This document shows, in pieces, positions 55,482-59,589 of a stretch of DNA of 64,000 bases. A program made the translations under genes and the position numbers. The notes below the pieces were generated by a model, which was not told the origin of the DNA, made no database searches, and saw only the letters and a program-made list of their open reading frames with translations. This stretch comes from Amphiscolops sp. MND2022 (Eukaryota), in the NCBI GenBank assembly GCA_964187785.1, contig OZ076411.1, positions 24,614,001 to 24,678,000 on the forward strand, in the 5' to 3' direction. How positions within the stretch are numbered: the first letter of the stretch is position 1; each line of letters starts with the position of its first letter.

Positions 55482-57999
55482 CTTTTCTCTCTTGGTTACA
55501 AATTAAACTAATTGTATGAAAACGATACAATTCAGAGAATGTGACAACTTTGAAACTGATGGCTGGTTTAAAAATTAACATGTTTTTTTTGCGATCGAGA
55601 TGAACTTTTTATACGACGTTTTACCAATTTTATTCTATTTTGCTCAAGCGTAGAATGCGTACACCAAGAAGTAGTTACAACCTTAGTATTTTATAAATAC
55701 TACATCTTTTTTATTCAAGACGTCAGGCTCTGAGGAACCTCTTAAAAATCAAAGATGCAGTGGTACTGTGGTAATTTGAACCTGGAGGAGGAGCTTTTTA
55801 ATTGCAATACTTTCAAAATTTACAAATTTCATGTCTTCAAACTCAAAAAACTCTTTTTTTGAAGCTCCCTCTAGATTCTAATTTTAATTCACTGCATTGG
55901 CTTCCAATGTAGAAAAGCTATCAAAAGAATTGACACATCCAATATGCACCTCCGATTGAAACAACGGTTTTGACTCACACATTCCAAGCGAAAACCCAAC
56001 AAACTTTGAAGCAATAAGGTAAATGGTACTCGGAGCAAATCTCCTATTCTTACAAGACGCTTTCGGGAAAATTTGGACACCCCACTCTCGAAAACTGGAC
56101 TGTTCATTGTAAGTCATAATATAACTCAATGCGTCGGATAGAGAATTGAAAAACATCTGCCTTTAGCAGGGACTCCTTAGGCTTAAAACTTTTTCCGTAA
56201 TGAAAACCCAAATAAAATCTCAAAGGGTCTCTATTGTTAAATGAGAAAAAACTTCGAAAACCGTCTCTCAATGCCAAACCACGCTAACCACGAGGCAAGG
56301 TCACTGAACAGTTATGATCTTCATTCAGTATTCAATCACTTGAATGTTTTCGGTCTACTAGTTATTCACTTCTCAAATTGTAGGCTGCTGGATATCCGTT
56401 GAAGTGAACAATTAATCATTGGATGCTATTCGCTCTCGGGTTTCAAGTCAATATCTTCCACAATTTCAAGAGAAAAATCACGTCAAAATTTTTTTGAAAA
56501 ACTGAACGAATCACATGCCCTACAGAAGCAATGAGAAACTGAGAAATATTTTTTCCTTGACTTTTTACATTTTTTAGGTTGTTTTTCAAGGAAAACATAT
56601 TTCCGACTCCCAAGGAAACCTCTTTGACTTTTTTTGGGTCCTGTGAATCTGATGAAGGTTTTGTGGAATAATTGCGGAATCCACTCAATAATTTGGCCCA
56701 CTCAATAATTTGCGGAAAAGACCCTTTTGGCTCAGTGCGACTTTTAATCGAAAAAAAATTTATTTGATCAAGAGGTATCTCCTTCACTTTCACAAATGTT
56801 TTCGGTTTGAAATTATTGCTCCTTTTTGGGCACTACGAGCTTTTTCCGAAGAAAATATTTGTTTTTTTTACAGTTGGCGAAAAACCGGTTTTACAGTCTA
56901 ATTGGTATCCTTTCGGGCAATTTCTGGCACTGTAAAATTGGTAAACTTTTCACAATAGTGTCCTTTGCAAATTTATATTATAAAATTTGGTGTTTTTAAA
57001 CGTGAGCGGGCGGCGACTTGGGCCGTTTCCGGCTTGTTCGATGTTCTGGTAGCACCGAAAAAATTACAATGGGGACCACTGTTAGATCAGAACCCAAAAT
57101 TCTTGTTGAAGCAATGACAATGAAAACATGAGCATCCAAATGTCGAAAAATTTTGGAAATTTGACTTTTCAGAAATTTCAGAAATTTGATTTTAAAAAAT
57201 ACTTTCGACCACAAAATTTTTTGGCATCACGATCAGGGAATGGAAAAATAATAATTGCAATTTATTTGATATTCAAAAATGGCACAATGAATTAATTACA
57301 ATTATAGAAAATCCCCAATTCAATTGACCAATTAATTTGCAATTGATATCAACGAAAAACATTTTTAAAACTTAATTTATAAAACATCACAATCAAAAAT
57401 GATATTCTGAACAAGTTTTTTATCCGGCTGGAATTACGTTGGTATTTGCCAAGTATGCATTCAATTCATTTAGCTATTCCAGCCGGTGGCAGGACAAAAT
57501 AACCAAGGTCTAAATAGCCAATGTCAAAATAGCCAATGCCATAATATCCAATATGCCAAAATAGCCAATGTCAAAATAGCCAAGGCCAAAATAGCCAATG
57601 CCAAAATAGCCAATGCCAAATAAGCCTAAACCAAAACAGCCAAAGTGGCACTATAACCAACGAGAACAAGGCAGCCCAGACTAAAGCAGACTAATTACAT
57701 GTAGAGCTCCAAGTAATGTCAGGCTTGATTAACGTAATTGCTTTAATGACATTCTAAGTGAACAATTTAATTTTTTGATAGCTATCGCTCATTTAATCCC
57801 TCTCTGATCCAAATTCTTGTGTAATTATAAAATTATATAATATATGAAATTAGTATAAGTTAGAAAAATGAAAATCTGTTTTTTCTCCCGAAATAAGAGG
57901 AATTGAGAGCCCAAAATTTGACACGTGAATCAGGGCGATATTGAGTTTTTTCGTTAGCCCCCCGCCCATTCCTGATTTCTTAACTCCCGGAAATAGGGA

Positions 58000-58150
58000 A
58001 TTTCGGGACATCGGGAACTTCCGTCTACCTTTTTTTCATAAAATGACAAAGACTAGGCTGGAACTCGGATAGTTCAACTATCCGAGTTCCAGCCTAGTGT
58101 TTGTCATTTTATGAAAAAAAGGTAGACGGAAGTTCCCGATGTCCCGAAAT
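58000..58150. repeat. Palindrome with 75-bp arms, 1-nt spacer (C at 58075), one mismatch
   Basis: Arms 58000-58074 and 58076-58150 are reverse complements except for aaaGacta vs tagtGttt. Confidence 0.97.
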
Positions 58151-58239
58151 AATTACTTTGGCCTAGTGGTCAGAGAACTGCTTCTGAAGTAAAGTTTACT
58201 TCAGAAGCAGTTCTCTGACCACTAGGCCAAAGTAATTAT
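58149..58239. repeat. Perfect palindrome with 45-bp arms, 1-nt spacer (G at 58194)
   Basis: Arms 58149-58193 and 58195-58239 are exact reverse complements. It abuts the previous palindrome. Confidence 0.97.
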
Positions 58240-59589
58240 GTGTTTAAAGATCGTTCCAGGTATTATATCAAAACACGGTATTAGCGTTTAGGAAATATGA
58301 TTGACAGTTGCTTCATAGTTTCCATGCACGAAAAACGAAAAGCGTAATAGATTTTTGAACTTTCTTCACTTTCAATATTTGTCATCAAGTCAATAAAAAT
58401 GATCGGCATTTTGCATGCTTTGACTGTCAATCAAAAATTTTGACAGGTCTTCACTGCTGTATGTGCTTTTTCTTTTTAAGTGCATTCAATGTGACCGAAA
58501 ACGCACCAGTTTTATCAATCAAATTGTTTTAGGTCATTACATTGATCTGCTGTGAAAGTATTGTCAGGCATATATGTGCGATCCCAAAGTTGCGTCATCA
58601 ATTGTTTCATTTGTTCAAACTAATTAGTTCAAGGCGCTTTTCACGTGTGCGCATCTGTTCTCTCGCGTTGGTTATGTCAAATTGGCTATTATGTCACGTT
58701 GGCTATTTTGGCATTGGCAATTTTGTCACGTTGGATATTTTTGCATTGGCTGTTATGACATTGGTTATTATGACTTAGGTTATTCTGACATGTAACCATT
58801 CCAGCTATGCATAATTAGCTATATAGATATGACCGAGAAATAGGCGCAGAAATTACAATTCAATGGTTTTCATTGCCTATTTTCCAGTCAATTAATTGAT
58901 GTGTTAAAAATATCCAATAAATAAATTTTCACTGAAAAATTGCAATTCATTGTTCATCAATCAATTTTTCCAACCCCTGATCACGATTCCCAGAGTGTTT
59001 AAAAGGGTAGTTTTTGGGACTTCCGGCAAATGCTGATTTGATATGCAAGTTCTCGTTGGCAGCATCAAGTTGTTCTTCAGTAGGTCACATTGGGGGTTGT
59101 GATTCATGTTTATCTAGGCTTCATGTAGCATCAGATTGAAAATCTAAACTAACAATTTATTTGAGTGTTTGGGAGGTTTGGGAATGTATGATAGTACCTA
59201 CTGACATGATAATTACGCCTGTTCACACGCAATTTTGGGTTCAAACAGTCTTACATTCACTGAAAATCGGAACTAATCAAAAGCGTTTGTTTTATTCTGT
59301 CTTATTCAAACATCGATTTCGAAGCTAGAAAACGAAGACCATAAAAATTCTTGCTCAAAAACCAAAGTGGGTTGCTCTTCAAGAGGTCTTAACTGATGTA
59401 TAATTTGTAAGGGGGGCTTAATCTTCAATAGGTGGATCCGAGGTTGGGGTGGGGATTGGGCGGTGTTGCGGGTGTCGGTTATGAGATTCTTTTCAATTTG
59501 AATTAGTTTTCATTGTATCAGAATTTGAGGATTGTTACTCCAGAACACAAATGCGTGGCAAATATTGAAATTGATGTCTGCTGTCTCAC

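What the first reader, a model, noticed from the sequence alone, without database searches (positions are those of the whole stretch)
58000..58239. Two abutting near-perfect palindromes with single-base centres (C and G) in the middle of a hAT MITE
Seen: X-c-X' (75-bp arms, 1 mismatch) is immediately followed by Y-g-Y' (45-bp arms, perfect). Known: hAT excision leaves hairpins on both flanks, and off-centre opening gives inverted duplications around a single base (Ac/Tam3 footprints). hAT ends here are C...G. Inference: an unusually large hairpin-repair footprint, or double template switching. It could extrude cruciforms and, if transcribed, yield Dicer substrates. No 8-bp TSD is visible between the inner arms, which weakens the excision model.
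Basis: partly seen in the sequence, partly recalled or inferred. Interest (0 to 1): 0.7.

Follow-up and report, generated by a model that had tools for sequence, protein, structure and literature searches.

The report
Two-sided hairpin-type break-repair scar
One old copy of a Mutator-like jumping gene carries a recent repair scar in which 75 and 45 bases on either side of a single break were each copied back-to-front. The scar is real in the sequencing reads and much larger than known scars of this type, but it is a single scar with no sign of a function.

Summary
X (58000-58074), C, X' (58076-58150) has one mismatch in 75. It abuts Y (58151-58193), G, Y' (58195-58239), which is perfect. These are the only such palindromes in the 64-kb window.

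At least ten other copies of the host repeat in the same genome have one X joined directly to one Y' (...GGATAGTTTACTTC...). This copy is therefore A-X-c-X'-Y-g-Y'-B, derived from A-X-Y'-B. That means two inverted duplications of local sequence on either side of one breakpoint.

- The arms share 9 substitutions private to this copy and differ at 1 base, so the event was local and recent.
- Contigs from four read sets (one sample) hold every new junction at single-copy depth and the Y-arm-only piece at double depth (X-centre piece 1.1-1.2x, as its partly shared arms predict). This is not an assembly artefact.
- X and Y' overlap by only TT (at most 4 nt). The centre C is not ancestral. X' and Y join at a 2-nt microhomology (AT).

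Best reading: one double-strand break, both ends passing through hairpin forms, opened 45-75 nt from the tips and end-joined.

hAT excision is not supported, because there is no 8-bp duplication. The host is a deleted Mutator-like element, not a hAT MITE. Excision of a transposon with a 2-bp duplication and CA...TG ends fits the anatomy but is untested.

Earlier scan notes show no like structure elsewhere.

The parts
57477..57484 (+). Left copy of the 8-bp target-site duplication (ATTCCAGC) of the host element
   Evidence: the empty-site paralogue L007:2647-2720 has a single ATTCCAGC where the window has ATTCCAGC-element-ATTCCAGC.
57485..58797 (+). Host element: an internally deleted, non-autonomous Mutator-like element (MULE). 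Arrays of 15-nt subterminal repeats lie at 57476-57660 and, inverted, at 58664-58797. The transposase gene is deleted at about 57770.
   Evidence: Searches give the boundaries, terminal inverted regions and TSD. Searches show that longer copies (L008, L002, L006) carry FLYWCH (PF04500, E 3e-13) and MULE (PF10551, E 8e-13) in the stretch missing here.
58000..58074 (+). X: ancestral arm, left of the breakpoint. It ends ...GGATAGTT.
   Evidence: collinear with all other copies. It keeps the family state at 58051.
58075..58075 (+). Centre C of the left palindrome. It is not ancestral; all ten other copies have T here.
   Evidence: alignment; present in reads. The G seen in one X4 contig is the reverse-complement traversal of the same palindrome.
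58076..58150 (+). X': inverted copy of X (75 nt). It carries the single arm-specific change, at 58099.
   Evidence: it shares 7 private substitutions with X and differs at 1.
58149..58150 (+). AT: a 2-nt microhomology at the X'/Y joint, assignable to either palindrome
   Evidence: arm I2 ends at 58150 and arm I5 starts at 58149. The sequence is read directly.
58151..58193 (+). Y: inverted copy of Y' (43 nt, or 45 with the shared AT)
   Evidence: perfect complement of Y'. It shares 2 private substitutions with Y'.
58194..58194 (+). Centre G of the right palindrome. It equals the ancestral base before TTTAC, so it may be ancestral or foreign.
   Evidence: alignment.
58195..58239 (+). Y': ancestral arm, right of the breakpoint. 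It begins TTTACTTC, and its first two bases TT repeat the last two bases of X.
   Evidence: collinear with all other copies.
58798..58805 (+). Right copy of the 8-bp target-site duplication of the host element

Best explanation
This is a germline repair scar of one double-strand break inside an old, dead Mutator-like element.

Shown:
- The ancestral sequence ...GGATA-G-T-T-T-ACTTC... was broken within the GTTT.
- The 75 nt to the left and the 45 nt to the right are each now followed or preceded by their own reverse complement.
- Each inverted copy turns around a single base.
- The two inverted copies are joined to each other at a 2-nt microhomology (AT).
- The template was this very copy, and the event is recent.

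Inferred mechanism:
1. Both broken ends became hairpin-capped, with the top strand continuous with the bottom strand.
2. Each hairpin was nicked on its 5' strand far from the tip, 75 and 45 nt away (or further, then trimmed).
3. The stems unfolded into long 3' tails ending ...X-C-X' and ...Y-C-Y' (the latter on the bottom strand).
4. The tails paired by their terminal AT, were filled in and ligated. This is end joining of the microhomology / polymerase-theta type.

Read symmetrically, each 3' strand running into the break consists of flank, then TT, then one extra C. The TT present on both sides implies a 2-nt staggered break or a 2-bp target-site duplication.

The most economical source of covalently closed hairpins with this symmetry is excision of a cut-and-paste element with a 2-bp duplication and 5'-C...G-3' ends, of a type that forms hairpins on the flanks (the CACTA/Mirage/Chapaev/Transib-RAG clade). 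This last step is a hypothesis, not a result.
For: Structure and statistics:
- establish the palindromes and show they are unique in the window.

Ancestral state:
- all other scored copies (L002-L011, L014) have X-Y' once, with an invariant GGATAGTTTACTTC at the breakpoint.

Local and recent template:
- 7 + 2 substitutions private to this copy are present in both arms, and only 1 is arm-specific.
- the best other genomic match to X is 89%.

Reality in reads:
- junction and centre unitigs at 1x and the Y-arm-only unitig at 2x, in four runs. The X-centre unitig lies at 1.1-1.2x, as expected from its 21 arm-shared words.
- No allele-like direct X-Y' joint was seen. The one 'skip' contig has depth 347 and mismatches, so it comes from paralogues.

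One break rather than two events:
- Both turning points lie within 3 nt of each other in ancestral coordinates.

End joining:
- 2-nt AT overlap of the two palindromes.

Perfect symmetry down to a single-base centre is what covalent hairpin closure gives. Fold-back priming instead needs a pre-existing inverted microhomology and leaves a loop of ancestral sequence. In yeast these were 2-150 bp, one-sided, with a 41-nt loop (PMC11724301).

Background from papers:
- hAT, Transib, RAG and MULE transposases all leave hairpins on flanking DNA (PMC5499845; PMC6900584).
- The CMCT clade has 5'-CA..TG-3' ends and 2-5-bp duplications (PMC12730594).

Lead only, untested: earlier scan notes report multi-copy RAG1-fold transposons with 2-bp duplications in this genome.
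Against: - No element is present at the site, and no allele or paralogue with an insertion at GTT|T was found, so the cause of the break is unproven.
- Known hairpin-derived (P-type) footprints are a few nucleotides long. Opening 45-75 nt from the tip is inferred, not documented for transposon excision in anything I could read.
- A first nick one base inside the element, needed to put the element's C and G at the centres, is not a documented chemistry. RAG nicks at the border. Hermes, as I recall it, nicks one base into the flank.
- The right centre G equals the ancestral base, so the overlap could be read as 2, 3 or 4 nt.
- All four read sets come from one sample, possibly the one that was assembled, and they are k=31 contigs, not raw long reads. 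Two of the bridging contigs have only 28-30 nt on one side.
- The Pfam RAG1 model found nothing in this genome. The same search also found nothing in any control genome, so it is uninformative.
Confidence: 0.6

Rival explanations
1. Replication-based serial template switching (FoSTeS/MMBIR-like). A nascent strand copied up to ...GGATAGTT and turned onto the opposite-sense template to make X'. It then jumped to the far end of Y' and copied back to the breakpoint to make Y. Finally it returned to the original template at G and went on.
For: The inserted 121 nt are entirely templated by adjacent sequence of this same copy. Short template-switch events and inverted templated insertions are well documented (PMC11724301; titles). 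The right centre G is the ancestral base, as a return to the original template would give.
Against: - It needs three switches, two of them landing within 3 nt of the same ancestral position, with no usable microhomology at the U-turns. The only local inverted motif is AGT..ACT, and it predicts a different centre (my reading).
- The segment X'-Y is not contiguous in the ancestral sequence, so a single four-point switch cannot make it.
- The centre C is templated by neither strand.
Confidence: 0.2
2. Excision footprint of a hAT (or nested Mutator-like) element: 8-10-bp duplication and flank hairpins opened off-centre.
For: hAT and MULE transposases do form flank hairpins (PMC5499845). A hAT-like end (CAGGGGTG...) is nested 4 nt from the equivalent position in another copy, L012. 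A young MULE family with a 432-aa open transposase stretch exists in this genome.
Against: - The hairpin tips mark the element borders, so X and Y' should overlap by 6-8 nt of ancestral sequence. They overlap by 2 nt, at most 4.
- Under the hAT rule as I recall it (nick one base into the flank, centre = complement of the flank base), the centres should be A and C. They are C and G.
- Similarity of the breakpoint to a MULE end is no better than elsewhere in the element.
Confidence: 0.04
3. Artefact of library preparation, sequencing or assembly (fold-back chimera, missed adapter, polishing error).
For: Palindromic chimeras are a known artefact of amplified or long-read libraries. All supporting reads come from one sample, which may be the assembled one.
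Against: Four runs carry the centre- and junction-specific 31-mers at the same depth as the unique flanks, and the Y-arm-only words at twice that depth. Stochastic chimeras would be rare and heterogeneous. No other such palindrome occurs in the 64-kb window. The one other found, in about 40 kb of paralogous loci, is an ancestral feature of a repeat family.
Confidence: 0.04
4. The palindromes are ancestral structure of the repeat family or two nested fold-back MITE insertions.
For: Repeat families in this genome can carry built-in palindromes. The L007:25-71 palindrome is shared by all 40 scored copies of a family with 1600 first-look candidates.
Against: No other genomic place matches either palindrome in both orientations. 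The extra arms carry this copy's private substitutions, so they were copied in place, not inserted from elsewhere.
Confidence: 0.02

Closest known systems
Palindromic (P-type) excision footprints of hairpin-forming transposons (Ac/Ds, Tam3, hobo, Hermes, TcBuster) and P nucleotides of V(D)J coding joints
   Same: Inverted copies of the flanking sequence on both sides of one break, turning at the former break ends and then end-joined. PMC3499496 shows the 3-4-nt version for TcBuster.
   Different: - The tracts are 75 and 45 nt instead of a few nucleotides.
- There is no 8-bp duplication.
- The centre bases do not follow the hAT rule.
- No element is known to have been at the site.
Fold-back (snap-back) inverted templated insertions at double-strand breaks (yeast Pol delta + NHEJ, PMC11724301; Pol theta / SD-MMEJ, PMC5728401, PMC4912351)
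   Same: Local inverted duplication next to a break, 2 to about 150 bp, captured by the other end with 0-5 nt of microhomology.
   Different: Those events are one-sided, start from a pre-existing inverted microhomology and keep an ancestral loop (41 nt in the yeast system). Here both ends are duplicated, the symmetry is perfect down to a single base, and the left centre base is not ancestral.
Short template-switch mutations / quasi-palindrome correction
   Same: A cluster of changes explained by copying the opposite strand nearby. They create perfect hairpins.
   Different: A single four-point switch cannot give X'-Y, which is non-contiguous in the ancestor. There is no pre-existing quasi-palindrome of any length at the site.
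Fold-back inversions / hairpin-capped breaks giving large palindromic duplications (yeast mre11/sae2, human inverted duplications)
   Same: A hairpin-capped break end as intermediate.
   Different: Those replicate into kilobase-to-megabase palindromes with loss of the distal arm. Here the chromosome was rejoined locally, with 120 nt gained and nothing lost.

Membership tests
hAT excision footprint | Both copies of the 8-bp target-site duplication (or most of them) flank the footprint, so the two flanks overlap by about 6-8 nt of ancestral sequence | tested here: not met
   X ends at GGATAGTT and Y' begins TTTACTTC in an ancestral GGATAGTTTACTTC. The overlap is 2 nt, at most 4.
hAT excision footprint | The base at the turning point is the complement of the flank base next to the element (first nick one base into the flank; recalled from Zhou et al. 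2004, not re-read here) | tested here: not met
   the predicted centres for a 4-nt overlap are A and C. The observed centres are C and G.
hAT excision footprint | Inverted duplication of flanking sequence on each side of the empty site | tested here: met
hAT MITE (the host element) | 8-bp duplication, short YARNG-type terminal repeats, and relatives encoding a hAT transposase | tested here: not met
   The 8-bp duplication is met. The termini are YGGTGG...GTAACC with long repeat-built terminal regions. Relatives encode FLYWCH + MULE domains. This fits MULE: TIR over 100 bp, 8-10-bp TSD, FLYWCH in Muta1 (PMC5499845).
Excision footprint of a CACTA/Mirage/Chapaev/Transib-clade element | 2-5-bp target-site duplication kept on both flanks | tested here: met
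   TT is present at the inner end of both ancestral arms. The range is taken from PMC12730594.
Excision footprint of a CACTA/Mirage/Chapaev/Transib-clade element | Element ends 5'-CA...TG-3'. Any element base left in the scar should be C on the left and G on the right. | tested here: inconclusive
   The centres are C and G. This is one base each, G is also the ancestral base, and retention of an element base requires an undocumented nick position.
Excision footprint of a CACTA/Mirage/Chapaev/Transib-clade element | An element of that kind was once at this site and the transposase makes flank hairpins | not testable with these tools
   No filled allele is available. The PF12940 search was uninformative.
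Fold-back (snap-back) templated insertion | A pre-existing inverted microhomology near the end primes the synthesis, and the loop between is ancestral sequence | tested here: not met
   The only local motif, AGT-TT-ACT, predicts GGATAGT-TT-ACTATCC. The observed sequence is GGATAGT-TCA-ACTATCC. The centres are single bases.
Single template-switch mutation (four-point model) | The inserted segment is the reverse complement of one contiguous nearby stretch | tested here: not met
   The insert is X' followed by Y. Its reverse complement, Y'-X, is not contiguous in any ancestral copy.

The most novel reading that the evidence does not exclude
The double palindrome is the excision footprint of one of this genome's cut-and-paste transposons with a 2-bp duplication, CA...TG ends and a RAG1-fold transposase. 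If so, it would be natural in-vivo evidence of three things. That branch of the RAG/Transib/CACTA clade would make hairpins on flanking DNA. The first nick would fall one base inside the element, leaving its terminal C and G at the hairpin tips. The animal host can open such hairpins tens of nucleotides from the tip and still rejoin the chromosome.
Probability: 0.2. Interest if true: 0.6.

Novelty: new variant of a known kind. Interest (0 to 1): 0.4.

Why it matters
Scars are the only record of how germline breaks were repaired in non-model animals. This one is unusually legible. The ancestral sequence is known from paralogues, nothing was lost, and both ends show the same treatment: flank, then TT, then C, then a long inverted copy.

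It shows that hairpin-type intermediates can yield palindromic additions ten times longer than textbook P nucleotides or transposon footprints, and that such a product can be inherited.

If a genome-wide census found more of them with the same 2-bp overlap and C/G centres, they would map past excisions of a transposon family related to RAG. They would also show where its first nick falls.

As it stands, this is a single neutral scar in dead repeat DNA with no indication of function. The perfect 151-nt and 91-nt palindromes could extrude cruciforms or give hairpin RNA, but that was not testable here.

Tried and rejected
How often such scars occur remains unknown.
2. tRNA origin of the X-Y' region. 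A-box-like and B-box-like motifs are visible on the minus strand, but ARAGORN and Rfam call nothing. There was only a sub-threshold MIR815 look-alike on an ancestral stem-loop.
3. A cryptic Mutator-like end at the breakpoint (aberrant cleavage by the family's own transposase). Local alignment of the 18-nt termini scores 7 at the breakpoint against 8-9 elsewhere in the element. Rejected.
4. An ancestral stem-loop at the outer border of X as the cause of the 75-nt limit. The stem is clear in young copies (L003, z = -2.0) but decayed in this copy (z = -0.6). No support.
5. A breakpoint hot spot in the family. Three copies end near it, but their borders are at different bases: L009 has a deletion at CTC, L013 ends later, and L012 has a nested element 4 nt upstream. 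Not a shared break site.
6. The Pfam RAG1 model in the own genome gave no hit, and none in the controls either, so it is uninformative.
7. I could not find a held paper giving the exact Hermes nick position. That rule is cited from memory.
8. The centre variant in run X4 (58075 G, 58099 C) is the reverse-complement path through the same palindrome in a k=31 graph. It is not evidence of a second allele or of flip-flop isomers.

Full report
**Observation**

The window holds X (58000-58074), a centre C (58075) and X' (58076-58150). The arms are 75 nt long with one mismatch (58051 G against 58099 G). Next comes Y, a centre G (58194) and Y' (58195-58239), which are perfect. The repeat finder starts the second palindrome at 58149, so the dinucleotide AT at 58149-58150 belongs to both.

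A scan of all 64 kb found only these two palindromes with arms of 18 nt or more, spacer of 6 nt or less and at most 5% mismatch. As single-stranded DNA the stretch folds at -140 kcal/mol, z = -34 against shuffles. Chance is excluded.

**What the other copies show**

I searched the window's own genome (1.07 Gb) with each palindrome. Apart from the locus itself, every place found holds one X-like arm. In ten of the thirteen, one Y'-like arm stands next to it; the other three are deleted or interrupted beyond X. Ten copies aligned across the site all read ...CTCGGATAGTTTACTTCAGAAGC... without interruption.

The window's copy is therefore A-X-c-X'-Y-g-Y'-B, derived from A-X-Y'-B. A block of 121 nt has been added: the reverse complement of the 75 nt to the left of one point, followed by the reverse complement of the 45 nt to its right.

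In ancestral numbering GGATA-G(p1)-T(p2)-T(p3)-T(p4)-ACTTC:
- X ends at p3 and is followed by C, where all other copies have T.
- Y' begins at p2 and is preceded by G, which equals p1.
- X and Y' therefore overlap by TT, or by up to 4 nt if the bases beside the right centre are counted as ancestral.

**Local and recent template**

Seven substitutions (and one indel) that set this copy's X apart from the family are present in both X and X'. Two more are present in both Y' and Y. Only one change is arm-specific, in the derived arm X'. The best match to X elsewhere in the genome is 89%.

The inverted copies were thus made from this very copy, after it had diverged by about 7.5% over these 120 nt. 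About 0.8% divergence between arms has accrued since, unless the arms homogenise each other.

**Reality in reads**

Only one sample and one study holds the stretch, in four runs stored as k=31 contigs. Laid on 57650-58650, the contigs covered the following:
- the A/X border (57650-58029);
- the X centre (58000-58120; 75 and 45 nt on either side);
- the X'/Y joint (58121-58178);
- the Y centre (58164-58224);
- the Y'/B border (58210-58315).

Depths in the four runs were about 80, 56-60, 76-80 and 28, the same as the unique flanks. The X-centre contig takes in 21 arm-shared words and lies at 1.1-1.2x (92, 68, 89, 31), close to the 1.2x expected. The Y-arm-only contig 58149-58193 had 120, 160 and 51, which is twice that depth.

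That is the signature of a true palindrome present on every sequenced copy of the locus. It is not the signature of a rare chimeric molecule or an assembler error.

The only direct X-to-Y' joint seen has depth 347 and mismatches, so it comes from paralogues. One X4 contig reads the centre as its reverse complement. A de Bruijn graph cannot orient the middle of a palindrome, so this says nothing about isomers.

Caveats: the sample may be the assembled one, these are contigs rather than raw long reads, and two bridging contigs have only 28-30 nt on one side. The graph forces that last limit.

**The host element**

The palindromes sit in a 1313-bp element (57485-58797). Its 8-bp target-site duplication, ATTCCAGC, is proved by an empty-site paralogue in L007. 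Its terminal inverted regions are built of 15-nt repeats.

It is not a hAT element:
- The termini are YGGTGG...GTAACC.
- Longer family members carry, in the stretch deleted here, a FLYWCH zinc finger.
- They also carry a MULE transposase domain, in a 432-aa stretch without stops that runs off the locus.
- Long terminal repeats, 8-10-bp duplications and a FLYWCH N-terminus are Mutator-like features (PMC5499845).

Several long copies are 97-98% alike, so the family is young. Derivatives of about 270 bp, made only of the two ends, are common. The window's copy is a diverged, deleted relative.

**Mechanism**

Both turning points lie within 3 nt of one ancestral position. Each inverted copy is adjacent to its own template. 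Nothing was lost, and the two inverted copies meet at a 2-nt microhomology.

The simplest history has four steps:
1. One double-strand break occurred.
2. Both ends passed through hairpin forms.
3. Each hairpin was opened on the 5' strand 75 and 45 nt from the tip (or further, then trimmed), releasing 3' tails of the form flank-centre-inverted flank.
4. The tails paired by their terminal AT, were filled in and sealed.

Steps 2 to 4 are inference.

Perfect symmetry down to one base argues for covalent hairpin closure rather than fold-back priming. Fold-back priming needs an inverted microhomology and leaves an ancestral loop, as in the yeast events of 2-150 bp (PMC11724301). The only local motif, AGT-TT-ACT, predicts a different centre from the one seen.

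**Cause of the break**

hAT or Mutator-like excision, which does leave flank hairpins, is contradicted by the 2-4-nt overlap.

Read symmetrically, each 3' strand entering the break is flank + TT + C. That fits an element with a 2-bp duplication and 5'-C...G-3' ends whose first nick falls one base inside the element.

The CACTA/Mirage/Chapaev/Transib clade has CA..TG ends and 2-5-bp duplications (PMC12730594). Its Transib/RAG branch forms flank hairpins. Earlier notes of this scan report multi-copy RAG1-fold transposons with 2-bp duplications in this genome. I could not test those notes, because the Pfam RAG1 model was silent everywhere and no more genome sequence could be fetched. I therefore give this sub-hypothesis about 0.2.

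A non-transposon staggered break with an added C on each 3' end would look the same.

**Rivals**

- Serial template switching needs three switches, two of them at the same spot without microhomology, and it leaves the C unexplained. I give it 0.2.
- Artefact is contradicted by depth in four runs.
- Ancestral structure or nested fold-back insertions are contradicted by the other copies and by the shared private substitutions.

As a contrast, a 23-nt-arm palindrome found in locus L007 is shared by all 40 scored copies of its repeat family (1600 first-look candidates). That is how a built-in palindrome looks.

**Verdict**

This is a real, recent, inherited two-sided inverted-duplication scar of one break. 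It is of a known general kind (hairpin or fold-back repair) but about ten times longer than described transposon or V(D)J palindromic additions, and unusually clean.

It is a single neutral event in dead repeat DNA. Its wider interest depends on whether a census finds more scars with the same 2-bp overlap and C/G centres.

Noticed in passing
L002:1781-3076 (minus strand); L006:1780-3075; L008:1936-2514: A young Mutator-like family. Copies are 97-98% alike. A stretch of 432 aa or more without stops, carrying FLYWCH + MULE domains, runs off the fetched loci. The family may still be active in this genome.
   Followed up: partly
genome places listed, e.g. C9:32455819-32456095: Many elements of about 260-280 bp consist only of the left terminal region abutting an inverted terminal region. 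These are true MITE derivatives of the same Mutator-like family (204 first-look candidates).
   Followed up: no
L012:1561 onward: In another copy of the host family, a nested element starting CAGGGGTGTTCAG (a hAT-like end) sits 4 nt upstream of the position where the window's copy was broken. Its other end lies outside the locus.
   Followed up: no
L004: flanks at about 2702-2709 and 931-938: One Mutator-like copy is flanked by reverse-complementary 8-mers (TTCTGGAC / GTCCAGAA) instead of a direct duplication. This suggests an inversion or a two-element rearrangement.
   Followed up: no
window 58020-58074 + 58195-58239, minus strand (and the same stretch of all family copies): A tRNA-like module lies inside the Mutator-like element: an A-box-like TGGCCTAGTGG, a B-box-like GAGTTCGAGCC and a ...GCCA end. 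ARAGORN and Rfam do not call it. The break fell between the two boxes.
   Followed up: partly
L007:25-71: A palindrome with 23-nt arms and a single-base centre is a built-in feature of a very abundant repeat, about 99% identical between copies (1600 first-look candidates).
   Followed up: yes
window 57426-57484 and 58798-58979 against L007:2647-2877: The host element landed inside another dispersed repeat. A paralogue of that repeat supplies a clean empty site.
   Followed up: partly
L003:1468-1519 and the same stretch of young copies (window about 57958-58019): Young copies have an imperfect 13-bp stem-loop just upstream of X, which gave a sub-threshold MIR815 look-alike hit. It is decayed in the window's copy.
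   Followed up: partly
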